This document shows positions 3,920 to 62,989 of a stretch of DNA of 64,000 nt, piece after piece (positions within the stretch are counted from its first letter, which is position 1; each line of letters starts with the position of its first letter). The notes under the pieces were generated by a model. It ran no database searches, was not told the DNA's origin, and worked only from the letters and a program-made list of their open reading frames with translations. The position numbers were made by a program, and so were the translations under genes. Location: positions 1 through 64,000 of IMG/VR virus record IMGVR_UViG_3300029983_000007; one strand, given 5' to 3'.

Positions 3920-4543
3920 TTATTTTTTTGAATATGGATTTTTACTTAAATAAGAATTATAATATTTCTTATTACTTGTAACTTCTTCTCCTAACCATTC
4001 TGGTTTTTCATAAGATTCATTTTCACTTTGAAGTTCAACCTCAGCCATTGTTAATCCTTCATTATCTCCATGAAATTCATCAACTTCAAATATATGATTT
4101 CCAACTTGAATATTATAACGAGTCTTATCAATTTTACCATCTCTACACAATAGAAGTAACTCTTTTGCCTCATCAACTAATATTTCTTTTTCAAACTCAT
4201 AACGAGATACACCAGTTTCATTAAGTTTACCTTTAATAGTTATATAGGCTTTATCACTTTTGATACGAATTCTAATAGAAGGATTTTCTGATATATATCC
4301 TTGAATAATATGATATTCATTAACAGCTAATGATTTATATTCACCTTTAACAAGAAATTTTCTTTCAATTTCTTGTGGCATAGGCTTTCTATCCATTTGT
4401 TTTAAAATTTTTTGTTGAATATCAATAATACACAATGTTATCTCATATATTCTATTTTTTATTTCTTCAGTTTGTTCTAGACTTTCAAGATATTTCAATC
4501 TACCATCCATACAATCATATATTTCTTTATACATTCCAATCAT
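3920..4543 (-). CDS. CYTH-domain protein (adenylate cyclase/triphosphatase fold); domain begins at Met55 (4381)
   Basis: EIERKFLV, RIRIK, FEKE, IDKTRY, FEVDEF, AEVE and KYYNSYL motifs. Confidence 0.88.
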   Translation of the reverse strand: MIGMYKEIYDCMDGRLKYLESLEQTEEIKNRIYEITLCIIDIQQKILKQMDRKPMPQEIERKFLVKGEYKSLAVNEYHIIQGYISENPSIRIRIKSDKAYITIKGKLNETGVSRYEFEKEILVDEAKELLLLCRDGKIDKTRYNIQVGNHIFEVDEFHGDNEGLTMAEVELQSENESYEKPEWLGEEVTSNKKYYNSYLSKNPYSKK

Positions 4544-4835
4544 AGTTTTTATTTTTTATTTTATCAAGTTCTTCTAATTTTTCTTTTCTAACTTCTATTA
4601 GTGTTTTTTCTGGTTTTTCAACCCAACTATTTGATTCACTTACTTCCCATCTCCACCTATACAAATCAAATTTTTTCTGTTTGATTTCCACATATCCGTG
4701 CAAATTAAAATCACGACCAATTGGACGCATATACAAATCATAATATTCATTTGGAATATTCTTGATAATCTCTGAATTAAATATTTGTTCACAAACAATA
4801 TGACCACTTGTTGAATTTTTATAATATTTGTTCAT
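4527..4835 (-). CDS. Hypothetical protein with C-terminal RKEKLEEL tag
   Basis: ORF in a tightly overlapping operon. Confidence 0.6.
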   Translation of the reverse strand: MNKYYKNSTSGHIVCEQIFNSEIIKNIPNEYYDLYMRPIGRDFNLHGYVEIKQKKFDLYRWRWEVSESNSWVEKPEKTLIEVRKEKLEELDKIKNKNYDWNV

Positions 4836-5076
4836 TTATTTTTTCTAATTTTTCTTTTCTTATTATTAATAAAGCTTTACTATAATATTGTGCTATATGT
4901 CCTGTATTTTTTTCATATGAATGTTGCATACAGAATACATATTGTGTTATTGGTTCTTCAAAACCTAAAGAGTGAAGCCAATTATCATAATCTTTAAGAA
5001 AAAGATAATATGCAAGTTCATCTAAATAACTACAATTTCCTAAATTCCAATATCCTAAAGATTTATCTATGTTCAT
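4819..5076 (-). CDS. Hypothetical protein with C-terminal RKEKLEKI tag
   Basis: ORF in operon. Confidence 0.6.
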   Translation of the reverse strand: MNIDKSLGYWNLGNCSYLDELAYYLFLKDYDNWLHSLGFEEPITQYVFCMQHSYEKNTGHIAQYYSKALLIIRKEKLEKINEQIL

Positions 5077-5395
5077 TTTTATCTATGATACGATTAATTT
5101 TCATTTTATCAGCAAGAATCCATGCTCCACCTTGGGATTCAGGTCTATCATAAGTTTTTATACCTTCAACTTCAACTTCTACCCATACTCTTATTTCGCC
5201 ACTTAATAGTTTTTCTTTCAAGTGTGGCGCACTTGGAGTGAAACAACAATGCCAACCAAATCTCTCAGCAAATCCATTTGTAGGTATAAACTCAGCATTC
5301 ATCCAAACATTCAATGAATATACTTCTTTAGCATTTATAAACAAACTACCAAGAGTACCATTCTTTCTTTGTTTCATTAATTTATATGCTATCAT
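5063..5395 (-). CDS. Conserved phage hypothetical protein
   Basis: ORF in operon; GFAERFGWHC...PHL...QGGAW pattern. Confidence 0.6.
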   Translation of the reverse strand: MIAYKLMKQRKNGTLGSLFINAKEVYSLNVWMNAEFIPTNGFAERFGWHCCFTPSAPHLKEKLLSGEIRVWVEVEVEGIKTYDRPESQGGAWILADKMKINRIIDKNEHR

Positions 5396-5628
5396 TTTAA
5401 ATTATTTAGTTTTTTAAGTTTTCGTTTTCTATATTCAGATAATGTTTCAAATTCATCTGACATAAATGGTACACATGTTTCAAATCCAACCAATACATAT
5501 AAATCATAACCATGATGATGATTTACATATTTTATTGTATAATTTGAATCAAGAATTAATTCATCATAAACTATTTTATCAGGAGCATAACCAGTATATA
5601 TGACTCTATCACCTTTTTTGCATATCAT
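5392..5628 (-). CDS. Small SH3/KOW-like protein with RKRKLKKL tag
   Basis: KKGDRVIYTG start; paralogous to 5630..5869. Confidence 0.55.
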   Translation of the reverse strand: MICKKGDRVIYTGYAPDKIVYDELILDSNYTIKYVNHHHGYDLYVLVGFETCVPFMSDEFETLSEYRKRKLKKLNNLK

Positions 5629-5629
5629 A

Positions 5630-5869
5630 CTATAATTTTAAGTTTTTTAGTTTTTTAAGTTTTAGTTTTCTATATTCAGATAATTTTTTAAATTCATTGA
5701 AATTAAATGGTATATCAAATCCAAATAATAAATATCCTGAACTATTACGTATACAGCTTATATCTTTCACAATATAAATTGAATTTTTAGTCAACAACCA
5801 ATTCACATGATGATAAAGTTCACCAATATAAACAACTTTATCTCCAGCTTTTGCTAGATTTTTTATCAC
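5630..5869 (-). CDS. Small SH3/KOW-like protein with RKLKLKKL tag
   Basis: KAGDKVVYIG; LSEYRK shared with the neighbouring gene. Confidence 0.55.
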   Translation of the reverse strand: MIKNLAKAGDKVVYIGELYHHVNWLLTKNSIYIVKDISCIRNSSGYLLFGFDIPFNFNEFKKLSEYRKLKLKKLKNLKL

Positions 5870-5879
5870 AATCTAAATC

Positions 5880-7428: not shown

Positions 7429-7448
7429 ATTTTATATTTATTTTTGTA

Positions 7449-7479
7449 CAAAGATATAACTAATTTTTATAATATCAAA
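7449..7479 (-). promoter_or_regulatory. Bacteroidota-type promoter; a divergent -7 box TATATTTG lies at 7520-7527 on +
   Basis: Minus strand TTTG-N19-TATCTTTG. Confidence 0.65.
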
Positions 7480-7547
7480 ATAAATTGAGATAATATTTTT
7501 TTATTTGAATATAATTTATTATATTTGTAATACAAATTAAAAACAAA

Positions 7548-7862
7548 ATGTCAATAGTAATTAAAGAAATAAACAATGAACAATGGCTACACTCTATTGG
7601 TGATATTCCTATAAATTTTACACCATATACGAATAGTAATAGAGGAACTTTTAGTGTATCTATTAGAATTGGTAAAATAAAATATTCTAATTTAATAGTT
7701 GATGAAATATATGACTTAGATTACGATAAAGATTTTATGATAATAGAAAGAATAAAACAAGTAAAACATGAAGATGGACTTATATATGATGATTTAATAT
7801 TTATAAATAAATCTCAATATTTAAAATACACAAGAAAACAAAAACTAAAACAAATACAATGA
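7548..7862 (+). CDS. Hypothetical protein with RKQKLKQI tag
   Basis: ORF track. Confidence 0.55.
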   Translation: MSIVIKEINNEQWLHSIGDIPINFTPYTNSNRGTFSVSIRIGKIKYSNLIVDEIYDLDYDKDFMIIERIKQVKHEDGLIYDDLIFINKSQYLKYTRKQKLKQIQ

Positions 7863-12213: not shown

Positions 12214-14013
12214 ATGGAAACAAAATTAAGAAAAGACATTTCAGTTGAGTTTAAATGGGATTTAACTCATATTTACAAAAATAGAGAAGATTTTGATTGT
12301 GAATGCGATAAAATTGAAGGTTTTACTGAAAAAATTCAATTATTTAATGGTAAATTATCTGATCCAAAGGAATTAAAAAATTGCTTAGATTTGATGGGCG
12401 ATGTACGAAAAATGATAACAAAACTTCATTGTTATGCTAATATGTATTTAGATCAAGAGCAAAATAATGAAGATGCTGATAAATTAGTTCAGAAAGTAAA
12501 AGATGCTGCTGTTAAGTTAGGCTCAAAATGTGCATTTATTACAGATGAAATTATCAATTTTGATGATGATACAATTTCTATGATGTTATCTTGTGATGAT
12601 TTGAAAAATTATCATTTTGATATCAAAGATACAATAAAAAATAAGAGTCACATCTTATCAAAGATAGAAGAAGAACTACTCACTAAAATCTCAGATGTTT
12701 TTTCTACGTCAAATGATGTATATACAATTTTCAAAAATACTGAGTTAAAATACTCAACTGTTACATTATCCAATGGAGAAGAAGTTTTGGTTGATGATAG
12801 AAATTATAGAGTTTTAATAGAATCAAGTAATAGAGAAGATCGTAAATTAGTTTATGATACATTCTATAAAACATTTGATGAATATAAGAATACTCTAGCT
12901 AAACTAATGTTCAAATTTGTAAAAAGTTCAACAACAGGAAGCAAAATCAGAAATTATAAATCATCTTTAGAACAGTCTCTATCATCAGAAAATATTCCAA
13001 TATCAATTTATGATGGATTGATTGAAAATGTTTCTAATAACCTTGATAAAATGTTTGATTATCTTAATTTAAGAAAAGATATTTTAGGTTATGAAGATTT
13101 GAATTATTATGATTTATATAATCCTATAGTTGATAATGTTGATTATGAATATTCATATGATAATGCTAAGAAATTACTTATTGAATCAACTGCTATTCTT
13201 GGAGAAGAATACACAGATATTATGAAAAGAGCAATTAGTGAAAGTTGGATAGATATATATCCAAATCAATTCAAAGACACTGGTGCTTATATGAATGGCT
13301 CTGTGTATGATGTTCATCCTTATATTTTATTGAATTATAAAGGTAAATATGATGATGTTTCAACTATGCTTCATGAAGCAGGACACGCAGGACATTCTGT
13401 GCTGAGTAATGCGAACCAACCTTATAATAAAGCAAGTTACTCAACATTTATTGCTGAAATTGCATCAACAACAAATGAACTTTTGTTACTCAATCATATG
13501 TTGACAACAACAGATGATAAACAATTGAAAATTTTCTTGTTGAATAACTATATTGAACATTTTAGGACTACCGTATTTAGACAAACTATGTTTGCGGAGT
13601 TTGAGAAATTTATGTATGAATCAGTAGAAAATGATGAGGTTCTAACAGCATCAATGATGAATGATAAGTATTATGAGTTACTTAAAAAGTATCATGGAGA
13701 AGATAAAAATATCATTAAGATTGATAAAATGTATGCAAATGAATGGTCACGTATTCCTCATTTCTATTATGATTTTTATGTGTTCCAATATTCAACTAGT
13801 TTTATTTCTGCAGTCATTCTTTCAACAAGAATATTAAATGGAGATAAAGAACAACTTGATAAGTATATGGAATTATTGAAATCTGGTGGTAGTGATTATC
13901 CTGTAGATTTGTTGAAAAAGGCTGGTATTGATTTAACTGACGGAGAATGTTATAAAGATGCATTCAAACAATTCTCAGAATATTTAGAAGAACTGAAGTC
14001 TTTATTGAAATGA
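12214..14013 (+). CDS. pepF: Oligoendopeptidase F (peptidase M3B)
   Basis: KWDLTHIY start, WID..P...K..GAY, HEAGH zinc motif, EIAS, W.RIPHFY..FYVFQY. Confidence 0.93.
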   Translation: METKLRKDISVEFKWDLTHIYKNREDFDCECDKIEGFTEKIQLFNGKLSDPKELKNCLDLMGDVRKMITKLHCYANMYLDQEQNNEDADKLVQKVKDAAVKLGSKCAFITDEIINFDDDTISMMLSCDDLKNYHFDIKDTIKNKSHILSKIEEELLTKISDVFSTSNDVYTIFKNTELKYSTVTLSNGEEVLVDDRNYRVLIESSNREDRKLVYDTFYKTFDEYKNTLAKLMFKFVKSSTTGSKIRNYKSSLEQSLSSENIPISIYDGLIENVSNNLDKMFDYLNLRKDILGYEDLNYYDLYNPIVDNVDYEYSYDNAKKLLIESTAILGEEYTDIMKRAISESWIDIYPNQFKDTGAYMNGSVYDVHPYILLNYKGKYDDVSTMLHEAGHAGHSVLSNANQPYNKASYSTFIAEIASTTNELLLLNHMLTTTDDKQLKIFLLNNYIEHFRTTVFRQTMFAEFEKFMYESVENDEVLTASMMNDKYYELLKKYHGEDKNIIKIDKMYANEWSRIPHFYYDFYVFQYSTSFISAVILSTRILNGDKEQLDKYMELLKSGGSDYPVDLLKKAGIDLTDGECYKDAFKQFSEYLEELKSLLK

Positions 14014-14285
14014 TAAAAGTTGGTGATAAATTATATTGTCATGATAATAGTTATAGTTTGATAAAACTAACTGAAGGAAAGTTGTACACAGTATCAGATA
14101 TTCGTGAATATGGTCATATTATAAGTACCAATAGTCGGTTAACTATAAAAGATGACGAAGATGAAAATATTTTTTTCTCAATAGATCAAGATGAAAATGA
14201 ATTATCATATAAAAACTGGTTCATAGAAAATAATGAATATAGAAAAAATAAATTATTAAAAATAGAATATAATGTTCAATATTAA
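14010..14285 (+). CDS. Small SH3-like protein with RKNKLLKI tag
   Basis: KVGDKLYC start; paralog of the next gene. Confidence 0.55.
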   Translation: MIKVGDKLYCHDNSYSLIKLTEGKLYTVSDIREYGHIISTNSRLTIKDDEDENIFFSIDQDENELSYKNWFIENNEYRKNKLLKIEYNVQY

Positions 14286-14288
14286 TAG

Positions 14289-14552
14289 ATGATGAGGTCA
14301 GGAGATAAATTGTATTGTGAACGCAATGATATCGGTATAGTAAATTTATCTATTCACAAAATATATGAAATTATTGAAGTTAAAACAGATAATTCTTATG
14401 GTAAAATTTTAATTCATGATGATGTTGATAGAATTATTAGTTTTACTATATATGTAGATAGAAATAATCTATCATATCGTAATTGGTTTCGGTTAATTAA
14501 TATAAAGGAAGAGAGAAAAATAAAACTATTTGATATAGAACATAACATTTAA
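14289..14552 (+). CDS. Small SH3-like protein with RKIKLFDI tag
   Basis: SGDKLYC start; LSY.NWF shared with the previous gene. Confidence 0.55.
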   Translation: MMRSGDKLYCERNDIGIVNLSIHKIYEIIEVKTDNSYGKILIHDDVDRIISFTIYVDRNNLSYRNWFRLINIKEERKIKLFDIEHNI

Positions 14553-14573
14553 CATAAAAAAATCTGAATTACT

Positions 14574-14604
14574 TTTGTAGTTCAGATTTTTTTATGTACC
14601 TTTG
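14574..14604 (+). promoter_or_regulatory. Bacteroidota-type promoter overlapping a terminator hairpin
   Basis: TTTG-N19-TACCTTTG within the AAAAAATCTGAA...TTCAGATTTTTTT inverted repeat. Confidence 0.6.
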
Positions 14605-15994: not shown

Positions 15995-16270
15995 TTATAA
16001 GTTATATTTTTTTGATGATAGATGTATTTTTATTTCAGGTATTGCATTTAAGTCTACAATTTCTTCTGTTACTTTTTTTATCCACATATTATTGTCATAT
16101 CCTTTCATACATAAATAACAGTTAACAATTTCATCTAAATCAAATGGATTTGCATCAGGTTCAATTTCTTCTGAATCTCCATTTTTATCAATTTTCATTA
16201 GTTTATATTCAGGATCATATATAACTGGGTCAATTATATTTTCAAATTTTTCAAATTTTCTAATTTCCAT
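15995..16270 (-). CDS. Putative virion-packaged protein (CTS-like N-terminus, KKYNL C-terminus)
   Basis: MEIRKFEKFE...SSKKYNL. Confidence 0.55.
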   Translation of the reverse strand: MEIRKFEKFENIIDPVIYDPEYKLMKIDKNGDSEEIEPDANPFDLDEIVNCYLCMKGYDNNMWIKKVTEEIVDLNAIPEIKIHLSSKKYNL

Positions 16271-16272
16271 AT

Positions 16273-16527
16273 TTAATTATTATGTTTATTATAATATTTC
16301 GAAACAGTAGGATTGAAGAAATTACGTACAATTAAGTTAGATTCTATTGTATAAACTAATAATTTTTTAAGTTTATCAAGAAATGTGCTTGTTGTTTCAT
16401 TTTGAAACATTAAGTTAGATAATGATTTTGTCATTAATTCATCTTCATAATCAAAACCTTTTTCAATATTATCATTTATATGTTTTAAATCATATAATTC
16501 TTTAATTTGCATATCTTTTTCTATCAT
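16273..16527 (-). CDS. Hypothetical protein
   Basis: ORF track. Confidence 0.5.
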   Translation of the reverse strand: MIEKDMQIKELYDLKHINDNIEKGFDYEDELMTKSLSNLMFQNETTSTFLDKLKKLLVYTIESNLIVRNFFNPTVSKYYNKHNN

Positions 16528-16529
16528 AG

Positions 16530-17677: not shown

Positions 17678-17858
17678 GAAGTATCATTATATATTCTTTC
17701 TCTTTTGTTGACAATTTGTTAAACCAATTTATTATATTTAGTTTTTCTTCTTTAGATAAATCAGAATTCCAGTTGAATAATCCACTGCCATTGATTGAAT
17801 ATTCTTCTTCCTGAGTAATATTTTCATTTGTTGTACTATATTCTCTAACATTTTTCAT
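17625..17858 (-). CDS. Hypothetical protein
   Basis: ORF track; starts MKNVREYSTTNE. Confidence 0.5.
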   Translation of the reverse strand: MKNVREYSTTNENITQEEEYSINGSGLFNWNSDLSKEEKLNIINWFNKLSTKEKEYIMILREEAQADEADSYAGEGL

Positions 17859-17859
17859 T

Positions 17860-18546: not shown

Positions 18547-18592
18547 ATATATTAATATTTATTTTCTAAAAATATTTTTTATATATAATTAC

Positions 18593-37720: not shown

Positions 37721-37930
37721 ATGTGGAAATACCTTATTATTACACTTTTCTTTAATGCCATATTATTTTATACTTATAATGTATTCGGATTTGAAGTAAC
37801 AATTATATTTGCCTTGTCTATTATTTGTTCAAGCCTTATTAATCCTACAATTCTTAATAAAAATAAGAGAGTGAATCAAAGAACAAATCAACAAATGTAT
37901 TCTACTAATAAAAACAAGATTAGAAGTTAA
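37721..37930 (+). CDS. Small membrane protein
   Basis: Two hydrophobic helices and a basic tail. Confidence 0.5.
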   Translation: MWKYLIITLFFNAILFYTYNVFGFEVTIIFALSIICSSLINPTILNKNKRVNQRTNQQMYSTNKNKIRS

Positions 37931-38595
37931 TGCTAAGAGCATATCAAAAAATTGCATTTGATAAAATTAATGATAATGATAAATCTATTATAATTTGGCC
38001 AAGGCAAACAGGTAAAAGTTATTTGATAAATAAAATAATAGAAAATTTTGTCATTAATAATTCAAATAAAAAAATCATTTTTATTACAGAATCAGAAAGT
38101 TATTTTGCTCATTCAACATTAAGAATAGAAAAGGACATAAATAATGTTGTTGTTAGGTATAATAAATATGATATTAGTTTTATAAATAATAATAAATTGA
38201 TATTTTTTTCAATAAGAAATAATATATTCCCCTTATTAAGTAATTATAATCCTCAATTAATTGTGGCCGATTGCTATAAGAAAATTCAAAAGTCGAAAAC
38301 AAATAATATATTAGAAATTAATATGTATTCTGATATTTCAAAATGTAAATGCTTGTATACATTTTTTTATGATATAAATATTATTAAAGATATTGATTAT
38401 AAAAATGATTGCTATATAAATATACTTCCATATGAAAAAATAAACAATTACTCATTTGATACTGATGAATCTATTATAAATTCAAACGTAGTAAAAGATT
38501 TGAGTTACAAACCTTGTGTATTATTAGATTATTATAATTTAACTTTCATTAGAAAACGGAAAATACAAATACTAAATAGTTTAAATTCTATTTAA
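37930..38595 (+). CDS. Degenerate terminase-like/helicase-like P-loop protein with RKRKIQIL tag
   Basis: LRAYQK...IIWPRQTGKS. Confidence 0.5.
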   Translation: MLRAYQKIAFDKINDNDKSIIIWPRQTGKSYLINKIIENFVINNSNKKIIFITESESYFAHSTLRIEKDINNVVVRYNKYDISFINNNKLIFFSIRNNIFPLLSNYNPQLIVADCYKKIQKSKTNNILEINMYSDISKCKCLYTFFYDINIIKDIDYKNDCYINILPYEKINNYSFDTDESIINSNVVKDLSYKPCVLLDYYNLTFIRKRKIQILNSLNSI

Positions 38596-38946
38596 TGCTT
38601 GTATTTTATTTTTTCTAATAATACTATTACTAGTTTTTATCCAATTATCTATATTAAAATATTCTTTACCATAAATAAAGTAGCTATTATAATACCAACC
38701 AGTTGAATCTGTTCTTGTGATACAGGATGCACCGTAAATGTTGTGTTCTTTTCTGTTGTGATAATATGTAATTATTTTATCGTAACGATTATTTATTATA
38801 AATTTAATATCTTTAGATTTTTTATATTTTTTTGGTATTTTATACCAAAAATCTTTTCCAATAATATTATTCCAACTATTATAATCACTATCTTCTATTA
38901 CTAAATAATTTATATTGTTTTCAATCGATTTATATATTTTCTTCAT
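38581..38946 (-). CDS. Hypothetical protein with RKNKIQAL tag
   Basis: ORF track. Confidence 0.5.
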   Translation of the reverse strand: MKKIYKSIENNINYLVIEDSDYNSWNNIIGKDFWYKIPKKYKKSKDIKFIINNRYDKIITYYHNRKEHNIYGASCITRTDSTGWYYNSYFIYGKEYFNIDNWIKTSNSIIRKNKIQALNRI

Positions 38947-50485: not shown

Positions 50486-51268
50486 ATGGAAGAAAAAAAA
50501 TTTTTCAATTTTAACGGTGATGAAACATTCGACTTAAATACAGAATATACAAAATTATTTGTAGATGGAGATGAACAAAAAACTAGTTCAAATGATAATA
50601 AAATTAAAGATGCTGAAAAAATTATTTCAGAAACAGGACAGAAATATATCGAAGTTACATCACTTCAAAAATATGAATATCTATTCACAAATTTAGATGT
50701 ATTTTTAAATAGGTTTCAAACTGATTCAGAAGAAGTGAAATCAATGACAAAAGAAGATAGAGACAAATTATTTGGTTATGGTAGAGAACTATTTTCAACA
50801 TATCAAACTCAATATAGTTCATTGAATTTTAATTTTGAACTTTCAATGAAAGAATGGAATTATATGGATAATATATTAACAAAGAAATTATCATATAATG
50901 GAAATGAACTTTTTAATTTTTGGGAGTTATTTACTAAATTTATTGATCCAACTAGAAATTACATTAAAAGTTTACCAAAAGGTATAGAATCATTTGTACC
51001 AGTTTGCTCAATTCAAAGTTTAGTTTTGGTTAGTCATTTATTGATGAAACACGAAGAAAAAGGATCAACTGATCATTTCTTCTATTTTAAAAATGTATTA
51101 ACTGAAGTTGGTTTGATGACAAGACTTTTCAATGCTTATGGTGTAGTACTAGAAAGATACACTAATATGTTTAATAATTGGGTAGATGCATTGAACACTA
51201 TGGATGGATATAATAACATAGATAGAATAGATGAAACAGGAACAGTGTCAGAGTCACAACAACAATAA
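50486..51268 (+). CDS. Hypothetical protein
   Basis: ORF track. Confidence 0.6.
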   Translation: MEEKKFFNFNGDETFDLNTEYTKLFVDGDEQKTSSNDNKIKDAEKIISETGQKYIEVTSLQKYEYLFTNLDVFLNRFQTDSEEVKSMTKEDRDKLFGYGRELFSTYQTQYSSLNFNFELSMKEWNYMDNILTKKLSYNGNELFNFWELFTKFIDPTRNYIKSLPKGIESFVPVCSIQSLVLVSHLLMKHEEKGSTDHFFYFKNVLTEVGLMTRLFNAYGVVLERYTNMFNNWVDALNTMDGYNNIDRIDETGTVSESQQQ

Positions 51269-51593
51269 GGAGATTTTTTGTGAAATACGAGACATGATAT
51301 ATAAAAATAGTGAAAAAGCTATTGGTATAAGTGATGTTAAGATTTCCTCATTGAAAAATCCTCATATTATTGATGATATAAAAAATATCAAGATTATTGA
51401 ATTAAATAATCTTGCTGATTTTATGTCTTATGTGAATTATGACCACTACCTAATATTTAAAGTTGATAATTTTTATTATTTCTGTGATACAGAGCTTGCT
51501 TCATATTTGTATAATCTTAGTTTGATTAAAATATCAGATTTTAATTTGTATCTCAGAAAAGATAAAATAAATAAAATAGAAAATTTTAACTAA
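51231..51593 (+). CDS. Hypothetical protein with RKDKINKI tag
   Basis: ORF track; start probably at the internal MIYK. Confidence 0.5.
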   Translation: MKQEQCQSHNNNKEIFCEIRDMIYKNSEKAIGISDVKISSLKNPHIIDDIKNIKIIELNNLADFMSYVNYDHYLIFKVDNFYYFCDTELASYLYNLSLIKISDFNLYLRKDKINKIENFN

Positions 51594-53059: not shown

Positions 53060-53093
53060 AAAAAAGCTTCATATTTAAATATGAAGCTTTTTT
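53060..53093. terminator. Bidirectional terminator, with a 22-nt direct duplication of its left half
   Basis: AAAAAAGCTTCATATTTAAATATGAAGCTTTTTT. Confidence 0.75.
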
Positions 53094-53350
53094 AATTTTT
53101 CTTTTCTTGTGTGCTTAATAGAATATTCCAAACATTCTTCAGATATGCTTTCATAAGTTACACCATTTATAGTATTATTTGTTATCATTCCTGGTTTATC
53201 AGAGTCCCAATAATCAGTATAATAACTTTTACCATATTCAGAAAAAACAATAATTTTCATGCTATTTGTATGATACCAAGGGTATTCTTTAATGTCATTA
53301 CACAATACACTACACACAACTATGTCACCTATTTTAAATTTTCTTTTCAT
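53075..53350 (-). CDS. Small SH3-like protein with RKEKLKKL tag
   Basis: FKIGDIVVC start. Confidence 0.55.
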   Translation of the reverse strand: MKRKFKIGDIVVCSVLCNDIKEYPWYHTNSMKIIVFSEYGKSYYTDYWDSDKPGMITNNTINGVTYESISEECLEYSIKHTRKEKLKKLHI

Positions 53351-55040: not shown

Positions 55041-55523
55041 TCATTTTTTTATAACAATATCTATATTTTCTAATTTTTCTTTTCTTGAGTATCTATATTT
55101 ATATTTATTAATACCTTCTATATCTGAATCTAAAAATTGTTCTATAAATTCTTCAGTTTGCATAGTAACATATTTTTTAGTACAATTTTCTTTATTGTCA
55201 CCATAATGACTAGTATCAAATCCTACTATCCAATAATTGTTGAATTTTTTATAATTTTCCTTTGTCACATCACCATCAATTTCTAAGCCTTCAGTCCAAT
55301 TTAAAAATGAATCAGAATCAAAAAATCGTCCATATGTTAATCCTCCATGTACACTTATGGTATTCATATCATCATATGAAACTTCATACAATGGATGATT
55401 AGTAGGTAATAATATATAACCATTCCCCCATCCAAATTCCATTATTAATGGATAATTTTGTATAGTAGATAAATGTTTAGTAAGATAATTCTCAACTATT
55501 AGTGTGTAAATTCCGTATTTCAT
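55041..55523 (-). CDS. Conserved phage protein (HGGLTY...GFD..H) with RKEKLENI tag
   Basis: WGNGY, VHGGLTY, WIVGFDTSHYGD. Confidence 0.65.
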   Translation of the reverse strand: MKYGIYTLIVENYLTKHLSTIQNYPLIMEFGWGNGYILLPTNHPLYEVSYDDMNTISVHGGLTYGRFFDSDSFLNWTEGLEIDGDVTKENYKKFNNYWIVGFDTSHYGDNKENCTKKYVTMQTEEFIEQFLDSDIEGINKYKYRYSRKEKLENIDIVIKK

Positions 55524-56106: not shown

Positions 56107-56160
56107 ATATTTTTTATATTTATATATAAATAGTATAAATAATATTAATTTTTTTTTTTG

Positions 56161-56243
56161 TGGGACTAGTGGGGCTCGAACCCACAACCTCCGAAGAGAT
56201 CAGTTTTACAGACTGACATGACTACCTGTGTCATATTAATCCC
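56161..56243 (-). tRNA. tRNA-Tyr(GTA), long variable arm
   Basis: GGGATTA/TAGTCCC; TCAGT-CTGTAAA-ACTGA; TTCGAGC T-loop. Confidence 0.9.
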
Positions 56244-56252
56244 ATATTTTTG

Positions 56253-56377
56253 TGGTAGCAGATGGACTCGAACCACCAACTTCTGAGACATCGGCCCAGC
56301 ACTCTATCCTTCGCTCGTTTCAAATTATTTATTCTAGATTCATAATTATCCCCTTTGTGCTTTTGAGTTACACTACC
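56253..56377 (-). ncRNA. tRNA-like RNA with about 50-nt D-loop insertion, apparent anticodon GAT
   Basis: GGTAGTG/TGCTACC; D-stem ACTC/GAGT around a 60-nt loop; CTGGG-CCGATGT-CTCAG; GGTGG-TTCGAGT-CCATC. Confidence 0.65.
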
Positions 56378-56419
56378 TTTTTTTATTGTAATATTCTTTA
56401 TTTAATTTTTTATTGAGTG

Positions 56420-56498
56420 TACTGCCGAAGGGACTTGAACCCTCATACACCAATTACCTTGTTAATGACTGGATATAAGCCAGTGGGGATACGACAGT
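56420..56498 (-). ncRNA. D-armless tRNA-like RNA, anticodon TAT (Ile)
   Basis: ACTGTCG/CGGCAGT; ACTGG-CTTATAT-CCAGT; GAGGG-TTCAAGT-CCCTT. Confidence 0.7.
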
Positions 56499-56514
56499 GT
56501 ATTTATTTTTGTTG

Positions 56515-56591
56515 TTGGTGAAGTGGGACTTGAACCCACATGTGACCAATTAACCTTTCTACTACTTATCAGGCAGAGGGTATATTCACCA
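56515..56591 (-). ncRNA. D-armless tRNA-like RNA, anticodon GAT (Ile)
   Basis: TGGTGAA/TTCACCA; CTGC-CTGATAA-GTAG; GTGGG-TTCAAGT-CCCAC. Confidence 0.7.
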
Positions 56592-56602
56592 ATGTTATTT
56601 AG

Positions 56603-56676
56603 TAGTCTCGGTGAGACTTGAACTCACGATTTATTGCTTATCAGGCAATTGCTCTAACCAACTGAACTACAAGACT
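56603..56676 (-). tRNA. tRNA-Ile(GAT)
   Basis: Canonical cloverleaf; ATTGC-CTGATAA-GCAAT. Confidence 0.93.
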
Positions 56677-56716
56677 ATTTTAGTTTATTATTTTTTTATT
56701 GGTATGATACTATTTG

Positions 56717-56797
56717 AGCACATTGACAGACTCGAACTGTCGGTGTTTATATCTCGCTTTTGCAGAACGATGCCTTCGCCACTCAGACCAAATGTGC
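56717..56797 (-). tRNA. tRNA-Cys(GCA)
   Basis: GCACATT/AATGTGC; U73 discriminator; loop CTGCAAA; 12-nt variable region. Confidence 0.9.
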
Positions 56798-56806
56798 ATT
56801 TCTATT

Positions 56807-57682
56807 TTAAAAATTAATTTTTCTTCCTTTTGTCCAACCATTAAATATCCATTCATCTAATTCACATTTTTTAATTTTCTTGTTTTTATTGATATTTAAA
56901 TTATAAATCCAACAAGTATTAAATTGTGAATTTTTATTTCCTTTTTGTTGTATTGAATTTTTTTCTCCAATTTTACGTTTCGTTTCATCAGTAATTTTTC
57001 TGCCAGAAAAAATATGCTTTAATTCACCAGATAAATATCGAGGATCATTTGTTGATACGTTTAATGTATTATTTTTATTGTCTTTAACCGTAATAAATCC
57101 TTTCTTGTGAAATATTAATTCACCAGATAAATATCTTGGATCATCAATAGAAACTCTAATTTTTTCGTTGTTTTTATTTTTAACAACAACAAAACCTTTA
57201 CCAACACACTGAAATTCACCTGATAAATATCTTGGATCTTCTGAATTCACAGATAATGTATTATTATCTTTGTCTTTAACCATAATCAATCCTTTCATTA
57301 TACTTACCAATTCACCTGATAAATACCTTGGATCTGTTTTATGTACTGATAATGTATTGTTATCTTTATCTTTAACAGTAATCAAATTATATGAATTAAA
57401 TCCTCCTCCACCTAATATTATATTATAAGTATTACCATTTTTAATAAATTCATCATTTACCAATTCTTTTTCTTTTTCCAACATTTTTTCTTTATCATCA
57501 AAATTAAATAACACAATTTTTTCAAAATTTTCAACTCCAAATTCTTTTATAGCTTTTTTAATATTAGATCCAGAACCCATATATTTATCATGTATGTTTT
57601 CTGTAATATGAATACCAATATAAATTTTATTATTTAACTTATTTGTTATTTGATAAACTATATAATATTTTTTATTTTCCAT
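56807..57682 (-). CDS. GIY-YIG homing endonuclease (Seg-like) with internal repeats, inside the tRNA array
   Basis: YIVYQITN..N.KIYIGIH...Y.GSG; 4x V..DDPRYLSGE repeats; NUMOD3-like end. Confidence 0.85.
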   Translation of the reverse strand: MENKKYYIVYQITNKLNNKIYIGIHITENIHDKYMGSGSNIKKAIKEFGVENFEKIVLFNFDDKEKMLEKEKELVNDEFIKNGNTYNIILGGGGFNSYNLITVKDKDNNTLSVHKTDPRYLSGELVSIMKGLIMVKDKDNNTLSVNSEDPRYLSGEFQCVGKGFVVVKNKNNEKIRVSIDDPRYLSGELIFHKKGFITVKDNKNNTLNVSTNDPRYLSGELKHIFSGRKITDETKRKIGEKNSIQQKGNKNSQFNTCWIYNLNINKNKKIKKCELDEWIFNGWTKGRKINF

Positions 57683-57751
57683 AAGTCGAACTTTTTATCA
57701 CTATATATAAAAAGTTCGATATCAATTTTATTAATATTTATTTATTTTTAG

Positions 57752-57838
57752 TACCGTTAGGTGGAATCGAACCACCGCAATCTATAAGACTGAAAGGTTT
57801 ATGAGACCTCCGTAATAACCAACTCTACTCATAACGGT
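57752..57838 (-). tRNA. tRNA with CAT anticodon (elongator Met or Ile2), long variable arm
   Basis: ACCGTTA/TAACGGT; GAGGT-CTCATAA-ACCTT; variable stem AGTC/GATT. Confidence 0.8.
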
Positions 57839-57911
57839 ATATTTATGTTTAAATATATAGTTAATATCATACTAATAGTATGATATTGTTAAATATTTTA
57901 AACTATTTTTG

Positions 57912-57985
57912 CGGGAAAGTTGAGATTTGAACTCAAGACACTTTGCTTAACAGGCAAACGCTCTAACCAACTGAGCTACATTCCC
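57912..57985 (-). tRNA. tRNA-Asn(GTT)
   Basis: Canonical; TTTGC-CTGTTAA-GCAAA. Confidence 0.93.
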
Positions 57986-57990
57986 TTATG

Positions 57991-58078
57991 CGCACTGGGT
58001 AGGATTTGAACCTACGGTGGAGATTACTCTCACTGGATTAACAGTCCAGACTTTTCGACCAACTAAAGCAACCAATGC
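57991..58078 (-). tRNA. tRNA-Asn(GTT), long variable arm
   Basis: GCATTGG/CCAGTGC; CTGGA-CTGTTAA-TCCAG; variable stem GAG-TAAT-CTC. Confidence 0.88.
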
Positions 58079-58080
58079 AT

Positions 58081-58117
58081 ATAATAACTTAATAATAACT
58101 TAATAATAACTTAATAA
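58081..58117. repeat. 11-bp tandem repeat (3 copies) in a tRNA spacer
   Basis: ATAATAACTTA x3. Confidence 0.85.
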
Positions 58118-58119
58118 AG

Positions 58120-58194
58120 CGGACTATAACGGTTACGGTCCGTTAATTTTACTTGAGTGACAGTCAAGTTCTCCACCAAGGAGCCTAATAATCC
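58120..58194 (-). tRNA. tRNA-Asp(GTC) with non-canonical T-loop
   Basis: GGATTAT/ATAGTCC; CTTGA-CTGTCAC-TCAAG; AACGG-ACCGTAA-CCGTT. Confidence 0.8.
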
Positions 58195-58201
58195 ATTTTT
58201 G

Positions 58202-58286
58202 TACTGGTAACGGGGTTCGAACCCGTGAGGAAATTTCTTTCCACAACATTGAAAGTGTTGCGACCTAGCCACTAGTCCATACCAGC
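58202..58286 (-). tRNA. tRNA-Glu(TTC), long variable arm
   Basis: GCTGGTA/TACCAGT; CAACA-CTTTCAA-TGTTG; variable stem GGAAA-GAAA-TTTCC. Confidence 0.88.
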
Positions 58287-61118: not shown

Positions 61119-61165
61119 AATGTTTAATTTAAATTGTTTAAATGATTGTTGTTTTAATTTCTACA

Positions 61166-61197: not shown

Positions 61198-61317
61198 TAT
61201 TTTAGTGTTTTTTAATGATTTAGATATATTTTGACTTATATTTTATATTTTAGTAACATTATAAATAAAAAATCAGTTTTATAATATAAATATATACTAA
61301 AAAAAGATATTATAAAT

Positions 61318-61560
61318 ATGAAAAATATTAAAAATTTTGTAGATTATAAATCTATGAATGAAAAATGGAAAGATGATGTTAAAGTTAAGCACACTGGCGA
61401 ACATTCTGGTAAGACTATTGAAGAGTTAGAAAGTGAATTATCATCACTTAAGAAAAGAAGCAAAAAATATCAAGAATCAGGTAAAGATGTACCAAAGAGT
61501 ATCATTGATCAAGAGCAAGAAATAAATTTTGCAATTCGAGCAAAAAAACATTGGAAATAA
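61318..61560 (+). CDS. Small putative virion protein
   Basis: Starts MKNIKNFVDYKSMNE; AT-rich TATATA motif upstream. Confidence 0.6.
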   Translation: MKNIKNFVDYKSMNEKWKDDVKVKHTGEHSGKTIEELESELSSLKKRSKKYQESGKDVPKSIIDQEQEINFAIRAKKHWK

Positions 61561-61588
61561 AAAAAGCTTCTTAAAAAGAAGCTTTTTT
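61559..61588. terminator. Bidirectional intrinsic terminator
   Basis: AAAAAAGCTTCTT-aaa-AAGAAGCTTTTTT. Confidence 0.75.
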
Positions 61589-61589
61589 G

Positions 61590-62108
61590 TTAATGTTGAC
61601 TAACAGTTACATTTTTTAATTTGTTAAATAGTCCATCGTGTTCAAGAGAACTAAAATATGAGCTATCATTATCTGAATAACTGAAGCAATACATAACTCC
61701 ACTTTCCACATCTTTACCATCAATTACTTGAAGTTTTAATTTTCTTTCATTGAAGAATTCGTTAAGTGCTTTTTTACCATATCTATTCATTGCATCGTTG
61801 TAGGCATCCCATTTGTCTTGGTCATTCTCAATATGGTTAAAATCATTATAATCAGGAGCGCCTATTAAATAATCACTTTGACATATAATATTAGTTGCCT
61901 TTTCAGTATCATTCTTTTCTTGTTCGCAGATGTCTTTCCATACTGTTTCAGCTACTTGATCAACTGAATATATATCATCTCCATAATACAATTGAGTATC
62001 ATCGAATAACATTTTTTTAACATCTTCAGCGCATTTAGGTTCCATTGGAAAAATAACTACAAAGCTACTTGATGATGAATTACCAACAAATCCCGTTCTA
62101 ATTTTCAT
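61590..62108 (-). CDS. MKIRxGFVxNSSSSSF-family protein
   Basis: Starts MKIRTGFVGNSSSSSF. Confidence 0.7.
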   Translation of the reverse strand: MKIRTGFVGNSSSSSFVVIFPMEPKCAEDVKKMLFDDTQLYYGDDIYSVDQVAETVWKDICEQEKNDTEKATNIICQSDYLIGAPDYNDFNHIENDQDKWDAYNDAMNRYGKKALNEFFNERKLKLQVIDGKDVESGVMYCFSYSDNDSSYFSSLEHDGLFNKLKNVTVSQH

Positions 62109-62266
62109 ATTTTATCTTTTTTATCATTTAAATCTATTGTAATATCAGATTTTCTAAAAATTGCTTTAATTATTTATGTTATTATACCACCAGTAATAGA
62201 AATTAATGAAATACAACCTACAAATATCCAAAATCCTGATGTTACATATTTTAAAAATTATAACAT
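62105..62266 (-). pseudogene. Small membrane protein gene with in-frame TAA at codons 3 and 31
   Basis: ML*FLKYVTSGFWIFVGCISLISITGGIIT*IIKAIFRK...; final TGA overlaps the next ATG (ATGA). Confidence 0.55.
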
Positions 62267-62305
62267 ATAATTTTATTATTTTTTTTTTTTGCAAATTTAC
62301 TAAAA

Positions 62306-62989
62306 TTATTTGATAATACAAAAATTTATTGTCAAATAATTATTATGAATTTTTTTTATCTCACACAATTTATCTTTTCTTTTGTATACAGGATTACACA
62401 CTAGGCATATAAGACCGTGTTTTTTTGTATTCCACATCATCTGATAATCACCTTTTTGTTTGCATTTAGGACATGATTCGTTACTTTCTGAACCTATAAC
62501 TTGATAATCTAATGAATAATAATCATTATCAAAAGAATAAAATTCAGAGTCTCCATCAAGTAAACTGTTTATGCTATACCATCCATCGTCATTATCGTTA
62601 TATTTTTGTAGTATAATTTTAAGTTCTGATTTAGCATCTTCTGATAATTTAGTATTATATTTCCATAAATCCCAATCTTCATTATTACATGTTGAAATTA
62701 AATAGCAATCTGCAACTTTTTTTATATAAGTATCATAATTGCAACTTTGAAATGTTATTGCCTGATTCTCATCTAAATTTTGTAAAAAATTTAGATATTT
62801 ATCGTGCTCATTTTTTCGATATTCATCCTGTTTTTTATCTCCACCTCCATAATCTCCATAATCTCCATATTCATCATATTTTCTATTAATCATATATGTA
62901 GCAAGTTCACGTACACTTTTAAAATTCTTATCTGATATTATAAAACTACTTGATGATGAATTACTAACAAATCCAGTTCTTATTTTCAT
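62306..62989 (-). CDS. MKIRxGFVxNSSSSSF-family protein with zinc ribbon and RKDKL tag
   Basis: MKIRTGFVSNSSSSSF; CPKC...CLVC. Confidence 0.7.
   Translation of the reverse strand: MKIRTGFVSNSSSSSFIISDKNFKSVRELATYMINRKYDEYGDYGDYGGGDKKQDEYRKNEHDKYLNFLQNLDENQAITFQSCNYDTYIKKVADCYLISTCNNEDWDLWKYNTKLSEDAKSELKIILQKYNDNDDGWYSINSLLDGDSEFYSFDNDYYSLDYQVIGSESNESCPKCKQKGDYQMMWNTKKHGLICLVCNPVYKRKDKLCEIKKIHNNYLTINFCIIK

What the first reader, a model, noticed from the sequence alone, without database searches (positions are those of the whole stretch)
4527..62989. Shared C-terminal RKxK[LI]xx[LI] tag on at least 13 otherwise unrelated proteins
Seen near the C-terminus of ORFs 4527 (RKEKLEEL), 4819 (RKEKLEKI), 5392 (RKRKLKKL), 5630 (RKLKLKKL), 7548 (RKQKLKQI), 14010 (RKNKLLKI), 14289 (RKIKLFDI), 37930 (RKRKIQIL), 38581 (RKNKIQAL), 51231 (RKDKINKI), 53075 (RKEKLKKL), 55041 (RKEKLENI) and 62306 (RKDKLCEI), and internally in 61590. 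Many of these genes are in units with host-type promoters. None carries the K[FY]N[LI] tag. Inference: a portable docking, localisation or degradation signal recognised by one phage or host partner.
Basis: partly seen in the sequence, partly recalled or inferred. Interest (0 to 1): 0.7.

Follow-up and report, generated by a model that had tools for sequence, protein, structure and literature searches.

The report
Shared C-terminal tag in megaphage proteins
About one in seven proteins of this giant, uncultured, probably Bacteroidota-infecting phage, most of them small, soluble and unrelated to each other, end in the same short helix (RKxK[LI]xx[LI]). The helix is selected at the amino-acid level, can be added to different proteins, and differs between phage lineages as if one unidentified partner reads it.

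Summary
All 14 listed motifs are present.

**Scale and enrichment**
- In the 330-kb record that holds the window, 69 of 577 predicted proteins carry RKxK[LI]xx[LI] ending 1-12 aa before the stop. Shuffles give 0.1-0.2.
- A position matrix raises the count to about 90.

**Selection acts on the protein, not the DNA**
- Codon use at the fixed positions equals genome usage.
- In orthologues the fixed positions change synonymously and the x positions change freely.

**Portability**
- Tagged bodies fall into 43 superfamilies.
- Two modelled bodies have different folds, a beta-barrel and an all-alpha bundle. Each ends in a confident C-terminal helix.
- None of 21 cellular DUF6794 proteins carries the tag; all five full-length phage copies do.

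**Distribution**
- The tag occurs across related metagenomic phages but not at ORF ends in prokaryote genomes.
- A complete 640-kb relative tags 63-113 other, unrelated proteins with a shifted version, RKxKIxEI[FL].

Best reading: an exposed docking helix read by one co-evolving partner. The partner and the outcome are unknown.

Corrections: five of the 13 window proteins belong to one superfamily, and the internal match in 61590 is chance.

The parts
4527..4835 (-). Tagged gene, 102 aa; motif RKEKLEEL encoded at 4566-4589, 12 aa before the stop
   Evidence: body has no relative among the tagged proteins
4819..5076 (-). Tagged gene, 85 aa; motif RKEKLEKI at 4837-4860; member of a small family with a YYxKAxxII-RKEKL ending
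5392..5628 (-). Tagged gene, 78 aa; motif RKRKLKKL at 5407-5430; SH3/chromo-barrel-like body followed by a C-terminal helix (residues 63-77)
   Evidence: (AF2 pLDDT 88.8)
5630..5869 (-). Tagged gene, 79 aa, paralogue of 5392; motif RKLKLKKL at 5648-5671
7548..7862 (+). Tagged gene, 104 aa; motif RKQKLKQI at 7833-7856; preceded by a Bacteroidota-type promoter (TATATTTG, 20 nt before the ATG)
14010..14285 (+). Tagged gene, 91 aa, SH3-like superfamily; motif RKNKLLKI at 14241-14264; directly downstream of a peptidase M3 gene
14289..14552 (+). Tagged gene, 86-87 aa, paralogue of 14010; motif RKIKLFDI at 14514-14537; followed by a terminator-like hairpin at 14552-14597
37930..38595 (+). Tagged gene, 221 aa, with a weak P-loop/ResIII-like N-terminal region; motif RKRKIQIL at 38551-38574
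   Evidence: (orthologues carry RKQKIQAL and RKKKIKKL)
38581..38946 (-). Tagged gene, 121 aa, convergent with 37930; motif RKNKIQAL at 38593-38616; the two tag-coding ends form a 32-nt inverted repeat
   Evidence: orthologues vary at K2 (RNKKIQVL, RAKKIQKL)
51231..51593 (+). Tagged gene, 99-120 aa depending on the start; motif RKDKINKI at 51555-51578
53075..53350 (-). Tagged gene, 91 aa, distant member of the SH3-like superfamily; motif RKEKLKKL at 53084-53107; the second match at residues 3-10 is chance
55041..55523 (-). Tagged gene, 160 aa; motif RKEKLENI at 55062-55085; Bacteroidota-type promoter 20 nt upstream of the ATG
62306..62989 (-). Gene of 227 aa with motif RKDKLCEI at 62357-62380, 16 aa before the stop; probably a real tag carrying a secondary C-terminal extension
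   Evidence: orthologue L024 ends ...RKDKLDEINKNI; poor flank score

Best explanation
RKxK[LI]xx[LI] is the conserved face of a short C-terminal alpha-helix, running from about 5 residues before the Arg to the end of the protein and often capped by Asn. A lineage of very large, AT-rich phages, probably of Bacteroidota, attaches it to many small, soluble, fast-evolving accessory proteins. I propose that it is a docking peptide. The variable hydrophobic side of the helix leans on the protein's own body. The invariant Arg, Lys and Leu side faces outward and plugs into one common reader protein, from the phage or the host. Dozens of different effector bodies are thereby brought to the same site or machine. 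What follows docking (recruitment, localisation or turnover) is not known.

Shown here: existence, enrichment, amino-acid-level selection, portability across folds, predicted helicity, absence from membrane proteins, spread across the clade, and genome-specific versions.

Inferred: that the conserved face is exposed, that a single reader exists, and that docking is the function.
For: 1. Enrichment: 69 observed against no more than 0.23 expected, and C-terminal position 1-7 aa from the stop. In related IMG/VR loci, 194 of 227 distinct motif-bearing ORFs are C-terminal.
2. Selection on amino acids:
- Synonymous codon use at R1, K2, K4, L5 and L8 matches the genome, including CGN Arg codons and CTN Leu codons.
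- In 21 orthologue pairs the fixed positions show 13 synonymous changes against 4 replacements (2 of them L/I). The free positions show 9 against 22 (p = 0.002).
- There is no fixed distance to the next start codon.
3. Portability:
- 43 superfamilies among tag-less bodies, and no Pfam or PHROG family shared by more than one of 51 tagged proteins.
- In the DUF6794 protein the Pfam domain is complete at residues 6-88 and the tag lies beyond it. None of 21 Bacteroidota DUF6794 proteins has the tag, against 5 of 5 full-length phage homologues.
- Tandem SH3-like repeats in other, unidentified organisms lack the helix.
- Two K[FY]N[LI]-tagged proteins have bodies of the RK-tagged superfamily.
4. Structure:
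- AF2 gives a beta-barrel plus helix 63-77 (pLDDT 88.8) and an all-alpha domain plus helix 114-131 (pLDDT 87.4).
- On a helical wheel the conserved residues point to 318 degrees and the variable hydrophobic residues to 194 degrees.
5. One reader:
- The complete 640-kb relative G304 shares core genes at about 40% identity. It tags 63 (strict) to 113 (loose) proteins whose bodies share only 1 of 178 clusters with the window genome's tagged bodies.
- Its consensus is shifted as a whole. Position 9 is F/L in 81 of 113 against 5 of 97 (p = 3.5e-25). Position 7 is E rather than K, and positions 5 and 8 are I rather than L.
- A concerted shift across more than 100 unrelated bearers is expected if all must fit one co-evolving partner.
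6. Cellular setting: 0 of 69 RK-tagged proteins have a TM-like segment against 54 of 407 untagged (pooled with the 101 K[FY]N[LI] proteins, 0 of 170, p = 3e-9). In G304 the counts are 2 of 113 against 69 of 867.
7. Specificity: 55 DNA-pattern matches in 596 Gb of prokaryote genomes; one lies near the end of an ORF that is unlike the tag (L102), none in the tag context. Nearly every viral match sits at an ORF end, often several per locus.
Against: - No reader was identified.
- I had no coordinates or PAE for the models, so exposure of the conserved face rests on helical periodicity only.
- In the largest superfamily (24-25 members here, 6,522 cluster representatives in public data) the helix resembles the C-terminal helix of chromo-barrel domains. 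There it could be an integral fold element.
- Genome-specific versions could also arise from repeated copying of one tag module within a genome rather than from co-evolution with a reader.
- Gene calls are my own heuristic, and the window genome is only about 46% complete.
Confidence: 0.5

Rival explanations
1. C-terminal degron or timer. The tag is read by a host AAA+ protease or its adaptor, so that accessory proteins are removed on schedule. This is a special case of 'one reader'.
For: - The tag is strictly near the C-terminus.
- A basic stretch followed by aliphatic residues resembles the MuA C-terminal ClpX signal RRKKAI listed in PMC8138137.
- The bearers are soluble.
Against: - The motif is not at the very end, since 1-10 residues follow it.
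- It is predicted as a confident helix continuous with the fold (pLDDT 86-95). ClpX degrons are described as unstructured (PMC12723719 abstract).
- No ClpP, Lon or Clp-type ATPase was found in the window genome, and no ClpP or Lon in the complete relative. A host enzyme would therefore be needed, and host proteins were not seen to use the tag.
Confidence: 0.15
2. An intramolecular structural element only. It would be a stabilising C-terminal capping helix, or a self-association helix, that spread because it helps small proteins fold. No external reader would exist.
For: - It is a helix in both AF2 models, with high pLDDT and pTM of 0.75-0.82.
- Chromo-barrel domains also end in a packed helix.
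- E and K at the x positions could form intrahelical salt bridges.
Against: - Invariant Arg and Lys residues on bodies of unrelated fold are not expected from packing alone.
- The conserved and the variable hydrophobic residues lie on different faces.
- The concerted shift between genomes across more than 100 unrelated bodies is hard to explain by packing against bodies that are all different.
- Distant SH3-like homologues and cellular DUF6794 proteins fold without the helix.
Confidence: 0.12
3. A generic polyanion-binding tail that tethers the proteins to DNA, RNA or the ribosome by charge.
For: - In the window genome the tag carries about +3 to +4 charge (R1, K2, K4, K7).
- SH3/KOW/Tudor-like barrels with basic extensions often bind nucleic acids (established knowledge; fold hits).
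Against: - In G304 position 7 is mostly Glu and positions 10-12 are Asp/Glu, so the net charge is near zero. The aliphatic and aromatic positions (I5, I8, F9) become stronger.
- Two invariant aliphatic residues are not needed for phosphate binding.
Confidence: 0.1
4. A DNA- or RNA-level element that happens to be translated, such as a recombination cassette end, a translational coupling signal for the next gene, or a terminator arm.
For: - Many tagged genes overlap the next start by 4-20 nt.
- The tag DNA is A-rich, like Bacteroidota translation leaders.
- In one convergent pair the two tags form a 32-nt inverted repeat.
Against: - Synonymous codon choice equals genome usage, including Arg as CGT, CGA or AGG and Leu as CTN or TTG.
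- Orthologues change synonymously at the fixed positions.
- The distance to the next start varies.
- 10 of the 69 tagged genes end a gene run.
Confidence: 0.03
5. A chance product of Lys/Leu/Ile/Arg(AGA)-rich composition in a 24% GC genome.
For: All motif residues use the commonest AT-rich codons.
Against: - 69 observed against 0.09-0.23 in shuffles.
- The reversed motif and the KR.K, KK.K and RK.R permutations give 1-2 hits each.
- Equally AT-rich prokaryote loci show no C-terminal use.
Confidence: 0.005

Closest known systems
Capsid targeting sequence (CTS) of T4-type internal proteins
   Same: A short terminal peptide shared by otherwise highly diverse, fast-evolving phage proteins and read by one partner. 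[quoted passage not shown]
   Different: - The CTS is N-terminal (my recollection, not stated in the passage read); it directs proteins into the scaffolding core.
- The RK tag is C-terminal.
- RK-tagged genes sit 18:8 in host-type versus phage-type promoter units, no different from untagged genes (137:96, p = 0.40) and opposite to the K[FY]N[LI] class (3:76).
- There is no evidence of packaging.
C-terminal ClpX recognition signals (ssrA; MuA RRKKAI) and adaptor tethering tails
   Same: C-terminal position and a basic stretch followed by aliphatic residues.
   Different: - The RK tag is not at the extreme end.
- It is predicted helical and joined to the fold.
- It is far more sequence-specific, with four or five fixed positions.
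- It was not seen at ORF ends among the AT-rich-codon pattern matches in cellular genomes.
Hub-binding C-terminal tails, such as the sliding-clamp-binding tails of T4 gp43, gp33 and gp55, or the SSB tail (from my own knowledge, not tested)
   Same: Several unrelated proteins carry one short C-terminal motif that docks on one hub. The G304 version, with hydrophobic residues at 5, 8 and 9 and acidic residues after them, has the same general style.
   Different: - Here there are about 70-110 bearers per genome, nearly all ORFans.
- No gp45-type clamp domain was detected in either genome.
- The Arg/Lys triad has no counterpart in those motifs.
Chromo-barrel / Tudor / KOW (SH3-like) beta-barrels with a C-terminal helix
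   Same: This is the fold of the largest tagged superfamily. The best matches are MRG15/MRG701 chromo barrels (TM 0.5-0.58) and uncharacterised AlphaFold DB clusters (TM 0.64-0.67).
   Different: - The matches are weak (E >= 0.006).
- The resemblance applies to one of 43 tagged superfamilies only.
- Tandem SH3-like homologues in other organisms lack the helix.

Membership tests
T4-type capsid targeting sequence | N-terminal location, removed by the prohead protease | tested here: not met
   The RK tag lies 1-12 aa from the C-terminus in 69 of 80 occurrences. N-termini of the bearers are not conserved.
T4-type capsid targeting sequence | Shared by otherwise unrelated phage proteins | tested here: met
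   43 superfamilies and two different folds.
T4-type capsid targeting sequence | Bearers are packaged into the virion | not testable with these tools
   No virion proteome exists. Promoter classes give only a hint, 18 host-type against 8 phage-type units.
ClpX-type C-terminal degron | Unstructured peptide at the extreme C-terminus | tested here: not met
   1-10 residues follow the motif. It is predicted as a helix with pLDDT 86-95.
ClpX-type C-terminal degron | Confers protease-dependent instability | not testable with these tools
   The host is uncultured. No ClpP or Lon was found in the two phage genomes.
Membrane-targeting amphipathic helix (MinD/FtsA type) | High hydrophobic moment with a hydrophobic face | tested here: not met
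   Mean hydrophobic moment 0.19, below the random-window mean of 0.24; mean hydrophobicity -0.40.
Classical nuclear localisation signal (K-K/R-x-K/R) | A virus of a eukaryotic host with importins | tested here: not met
   - Promoters of the Bacteroidota type (TAnnTTTG at -7, TTTG at -33).
- Almost no Shine-Dalgarno sequences and A-rich leaders.
- PHROG (phage protein family) matches: a weak major-tail-protein hit, DNA primase and HNH homing endonuclease; DNA polymerase B by Pfam.
Single homologous protein family with a conserved C-terminal helix | All bearers share ancestry or fold | tested here: not met
   - One superfamily holds 24-25 of the 69; the rest fall into 42 groups.
- Beta-barrel against all-alpha models.
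- Cellular DUF6794 proteins lack the tag.
DNA-level cassette, coupling or terminator element | Nucleotide conservation beyond codon bias, or a fixed register to neighbouring signals | tested here: not met
Short linear docking motif read by one partner | Portable, under purifying selection, and varying in concert between lineages | tested here: met
Short linear docking motif read by one partner | An identified binding partner | not tested
   No candidate could be named.

The most novel reading that the evidence does not exclude
These megaphages use a proteome-wide address code. Short terminal signatures that never co-occur are written onto about 30% of all proteins in the window genome: the RK helix on 69-90 proteins, and MK[YH]LKxFE...K[FY]N[LI]-COOH on 101 proteins transcribed from a phage-specific promoter. 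The signatures would route large, fast-turning-over sets of accessory proteins to different readers or fates. Each lineage would evolve its own version together with its reader.
Probability: 0.25. Interest if true: 0.9.

Novelty: new variant of a known kind. Interest (0 to 1): 0.8.

Why it matters
- Huge phages carry hundreds of ORFans with no handle on function. A tag shared by 12-16% of the proteome turns them into one testable set. Finding the single reader would say where or how about 70-110 unknown proteins per genome act.
- The tag is short, portable and absent, in its AT-rich coding form, from ORF ends in the prokaryote genomes scanned, so it could become a tool for directing cargo in Bacteroidota.
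- With the second class, K[FY]N[LI], it suggests that protein sorting by linear terminal signals is used in tailed phages on a scale not described before. I found no paper mentioning either motif.

Tried and rejected
- A sigma-70 promoter scan of 3.8-15.2 kb gave 102 sites against 105 expected, so it is uninformative. The real host-type signal is TAnnTTTG.
- tblastn of a large window protein and of a tagged protein against 50,697 GenBank phage records found no match.
- The word-indexed protein search returned only the query's own cluster or close orthologues.
- Pfam and PHROG scans found no family shared by tagged proteins: the 10 window proteins, 51 tagged proteins, and 10 larger tagged proteins from relatives.
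- The ESM Atlas gave only unnamed viral clusters.
- A DNA-pattern scan of 596 Gb of prokaryote genomes gave 55 scattered single hits; none was in the tag context at an ORF end, so there is no host clue.
- Sequencing-run search: all holders are DNA runs from peat and soil metagenomes and none is RNA, so expression could not be examined.
- Complex prediction on two copies of the SH3-type tagged protein scored 0.01 against a mark of 0.42. The verdict was 'no answer', which is neither support nor evidence against self-association.
- Phage-encoded reader candidates: in the window genome (46% complete) no ClpP, Clp-type AAA_2, Lon or gp45-type clamp domain; in the complete relative G304 no ClpP, Lon or clamp domain (AAA_2 not searched there). 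G304 has only four generic AAA or RecA-like ATPases.
- The membrane-targeting helix, nuclear localisation signal and DNA-level element readings were each tested and not met.

Full report
**What the window is**

The window is the first 64 kb of a 330,208-bp IMG/VR virus record with 24% GC, no terminal repeats, and a CheckV completeness of about 46%. Identical proteins also occur on a 711-kb contig. It comes from peat metagenomes.

It looks like a phage, on PHROG and Pfam matches to:
- a weak major-tail-protein hit and DNA primase;
- a family-B DNA polymerase fragment next to HNH and DUF7487 endonuclease genes;
- an SMC/Rad50-like ATPase and seven tRNA genes.

The host is most likely a member of Bacteroidota:
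- Only 10 of 577 genes have a Shine-Dalgarno-like word upstream, against 25 in random 15-mers.
- Leaders are 55-66% A at positions -20 to -9.
- The word most enriched in intergenic DNA is TATCTTTG. This fits the Bacteroidota sigma-ABfr -7 box TAnnTTTG, usually with TTTG about 20 nt upstream and about 20-25 nt before the ATG.
- The consensus and the A-rich, SD-less leaders are described in PMC7366714.
- A second, phage-specific promoter-like word, TTTTTWATATATA, lies just upstream of other gene arrays.

**Checking the observation**

With my own codon-bias gene caller (577 genes, 90% coverage), RK.K[LI]..[LI] occurs 80 times. In 69 proteins it ends within 12 aa of the C-terminus, with a sharp peak at 3-6 aa.

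Controls:
- Shuffling whole proteins gives 0.09 such proteins. Shuffling only the last 30 residues, which keeps local composition, gives 0.23.
- The reversed motif occurs once and the KR.K, KK.K and RK.R permutations 1-2 times each.
- A position matrix finds 98 proteins above the best shuffled score, 90 of them C-terminal. Position 2 tolerates N, R, M, H or T in a minority.

The extended consensus is a hydrophobic residue at -4 and -1, K at -3, E at -2, then R-K-x-K-L-x-K-L-N-x-[IL] and the stop. Tagged proteins are small, with a median of 89 aa.

Two listed or incidental matches are chance. These are the internal one in 61590 and the N-terminal one in 53075, with flank scores of -21 and -18 against a median of +9.6. 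ORF 62306 has the motif 16 aa from its end, but its orthologue stops 4 aa after it.

**Protein level, not DNA level**

- At the fixed positions the synonymous codons are used as in the rest of the genome. Examples are Arg as AGA 87%, CGT/CGA 9% and AGG 4%, and Leu as TTA, TTG, CTT, CTA and CTC in genome proportions.
- In 21 pairs of diverged orthologues, the five fixed positions show 13 synonymous changes, 2 L/I exchanges and 2 replacements, both at K2 of one gene. The three x positions show 9 synonymous and 22 replacement changes (p = 0.002).
- The distance from the tag to the next start codon is not fixed: -20, -17, -14, -11, -8, -4 or an intergenic gap. Ten of the 69 tagged genes end a gene run.

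This rules out a recombination site, a coupling signal or a terminator arm as the primary cause.

**Portability**

With the tag removed, the 69 bodies fall into 52 blastp clusters and 43 jackhmmer superfamilies.

One superfamily holds 24, or 25 with ORF 53075. It includes the window ORFs 5392, 5630, 14010 and 14289.
- Its AF2 model (pLDDT 88.8) is a small beta-barrel followed by helix 63-77, which contains the tag.
- The closest folds are chromo-barrel, Tudor and KOW domains, at weak scores.
- A profile of this family finds 6,522 cluster representatives in 1.84 billion proteins. Of the 127 single-module proteins among the best 150, 115 carry the strict tag, although the profile included it.
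- The multi-module hits I inspected, proteins of other, unidentified organisms with up to seven tandem copies of the barrel (e.g. P0008-P0010), have no tag at all.

The other 42 groups share no family. Of 51 tagged proteins scanned, no Pfam or PHROG family is hit by more than one.

One protein carries a complete DUF6794 domain (residues 6-88 of 132, E = 5e-19) with the tag 30 aa further on.
- DUF6794 occurs in 30 of 301 sampled Bacteroidota genomes.
- None of 21 distinct cellular proteins carries even the loose tag. The nearest one (38% identical) ends where the phage protein continues into the tag.
- All five full-length phage homologues have the tag.
- Its AF2 model (pLDDT 87.4) is all-alpha, and the tag again forms the last helix, residues 114-131.

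Finally, two proteins that end in the other tag, K[FY]N[LI], have bodies of the RK-tagged barrel superfamily. The helix is therefore an add-on that sits on unrelated folds.

**Spread in nature**

- A DNA pattern for the commonest coding of RKxKLxKLN hits 67 stretches of IMG/VR contigs.
- In them and in four further loci, 227 distinct ORFs carry the motif, 194 at the C-terminus.
- Many of these loci have no nucleotide similarity to the window genome yet hold 5-23 tagged ORFs each, for example L054 and L055.
- The same pattern hits 55 places in 596 Gb of prokaryote genomes. The hits are scattered over unrelated taxa and none is in the tag context at the end of an ORF.
- No GenBank phage matched, and no paper mentions the motif.

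**An independent complete genome**

One hit lies in a 639,979-bp record with direct terminal repeats and CheckV completeness of 100% (G304). I fetched it whole.
- It is a distant relative: 107 of 577 window-genome proteins have a hit, at a median of 40% identity. It shows the same SD-less leaders and both promoter words.
- Of its 980 predicted proteins, 63 carry the strict tag and 113 the loose form R..K[LIM]..[LIM] near the C-terminus. Shuffles give 0.15 and 1.85.
- Their bodies share only 1 of 178 blastp clusters with the window genome's tagged bodies. The tagged gene sets have turned over completely while the tag stayed.
- The tag has shifted as a whole. Position 5 is I in 71 of 113 against 18 of 97. 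Position 7 is E in 42 of 113 against 8 of 97. Position 8 is I in 78 of 113 against 36 of 97. Position 9 is F/L in 81 of 113 against 5 of 97 (p = 3.5e-25), whereas N is usual in the window genome. Acidic residues follow.
- Other contigs show a further version ending in ...K[IL]CSxQEIK.

A concerted change over more than 100 unrelated proteins per genome is the strongest indirect evidence that all tags must fit one partner that differs between lineages.

**What the helix looks like**

On a 100-degree helical wheel the information-rich positions (R1, K2, K4, L5, L8, N9) point to 318 degrees. The variable hydrophobic positions (-4, -1, 3, 11) point to 194 degrees. My reading is that the variable side leans on the protein's own body and the invariant Arg/Lys/Leu side is offered to a partner. 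This is inference, because I had no coordinates.

The helix is not amphipathic in the membrane-binding sense. Its hydrophobic moment is 0.19, below the random mean of 0.24. No RK-tagged protein (0 of 69) has a TM-like segment, against 54 of 407 untagged (pooled with the K[FY]N[LI] class, 0 of 170, p = 3e-9). G304 shows the same pattern.

The near-neutral, more hydrophobic G304 version argues against a purely electrostatic nucleic-acid tail.

**Expression class**

Counting each gene under the nearest upstream promoter word in its gene run:
- RK-tagged genes: 18 Bacteroidota-type to 8 phage-type, with 42 unassigned.
- Untagged genes: 137 to 96 (no different from RK-tagged, p = 0.40).
- K[FY]N[LI] genes: 3 to 76 (very different from RK-tagged, p = 2e-11).

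**Mechanism and rivals**

I favour a docking helix read by one partner, which brings many different accessory proteins to one site or machine (confidence 0.5).
- A degron is a special case that I rate lower. The motif is helical, joined to the fold and not at the very end, and neither genome encodes ClpP or Lon.
- A purely structural helix is hard to square with invariant basic residues on unrelated folds and with the concerted shift between genomes.
- DNA-level and chance explanations are excluded.
- The one complex prediction I could run, self-association of the barrel protein, gave no answer and counts neither way.

**Comparison with known systems**

The nearest concept is the capsid targeting sequence of T4-type internal proteins, a conserved terminal peptide on very diverse proteins (PMC3012670). 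That signal is N-terminal (my recollection; not stated in the passage read) and serves packaging. ClpX signals such as MuA's RRKKAI (PMC8138137) share the basic C-terminal character but not the structure or position. Hub-binding C-terminal tails such as clamp or SSB tails are an analogy from memory only. No gp45-type clamp domain was found.

I therefore file this as a new variant of a known kind: a portable terminal recognition peptide, with an unknown reader, on an unusually large scale.

Noticed in passing
window 15995-20442 and 30007-30680; genome-wide arrays in G000, e.g. 247-252 kb, 255-260 kb, 265-269 kb, 277-280 kb, 289-293 kb, 303-305.5 kb: A second, even commoner signature. 101 of 577 proteins end exactly in [STA]xK[FY]N[LI]-stop, and most also begin MK[YH]LKxFE or MITxFKxFE. 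They form long co-directional arrays with ATGA overlaps behind a TTTTTWATATATA word. Their bodies fall into 51 blastp clusters. Unlike the RK tag, its codons are biased (AAC 50% against 14% genome-wide; ATA/TTA at the last residue), so an RNA-level constraint may be added. The signature is absent from the complete relative G304. The N-terminal part recalls the T4 capsid targeting sequence from memory; this was not tested.
   Followed up: partly
whole window, e.g. 7429-7547, upstream of 8367, 10964, 37155, 55523: Host inference. Promoters are of the Bacteroidota type (TTTG about 20 nt before TAnnTTTG, which lies 20-25 nt before the ATG). There is almost no Shine-Dalgarno sequence and leaders are A-rich. 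The same holds in the 640-kb relative.
   Followed up: yes
window 38548-38619: The tag-coding 3' ends of the convergent genes 37930(+) and 38581(-) overlap. They form a 32-nt inverted repeat, 81% complementary with an 8-nt loop, because both encode RKxKIQxLN. It may double as a bidirectional terminator.
   Followed up: partly
window 20915-25003 and 32346-33935: A family-B DNA polymerase fragment (23642-25003 matches only part of the Pfam profile) lies next to an HNH homing endonuclease (20915-21997) and two DUF7487 proteins (22003-23529, 32346-33935). The polymerase gene looks split or invaded by mobile endonucleases.
   Followed up: no
window 56160-58286: A cluster of seven tRNA genes on the minus strand. 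Several are unusually long for their type: Met 88 nt, Asn 89 nt, Glu 86 nt, Cys 82 nt. They may contain introns or be miscalls.
   Followed up: no
window 12214-14552: A peptidase M3 (oligopeptidase F-like) gene of 599 aa is followed directly by two RK-tagged paralogues in the same promoter-to-terminator unit.
   Followed up: no
G000 as a whole; G304: The record is only about 46% of a genome. Identical proteins lie on a 711-kb contig, and a complete relative is 640 kb with terminal repeats, so this is a megaphage lineage with about 25% GC. TAG stops are rare (20 of 577) but over-represented in RK-tagged genes (7 of 69, against 13 of 407 untagged and 0 of 101 K[FY]N[LI]). TAG still acts as a stop, right after the tags.
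   Followed up: partly
G000 218252-218992, 225537-225881, 82108-82410, 67737-68624: A few well-scoring tags lie inside longer ORFs, 16-236 aa from the end, or at residues 16-23 of a 114-aa ORF. These may be fusions of a tagged gene with its neighbour or errors in my gene calls.
   Followed up: no
L013 (G000 about 268-271 kb): PARG-like (PF10021) and HD-domain genes lie next to a four-gene array of RK-tagged paralogues.
   Followed up: no
IMG/VR loci L049, L054, L060, L069; proteins P0012-P0140: A third tag version in other contigs continues after L8 with C-[SL]-x-Q-[EV]-I-[KE] (e.g. ...RKQKLKKICSSQEIK), adding a conserved Cys.
   Followed up: no
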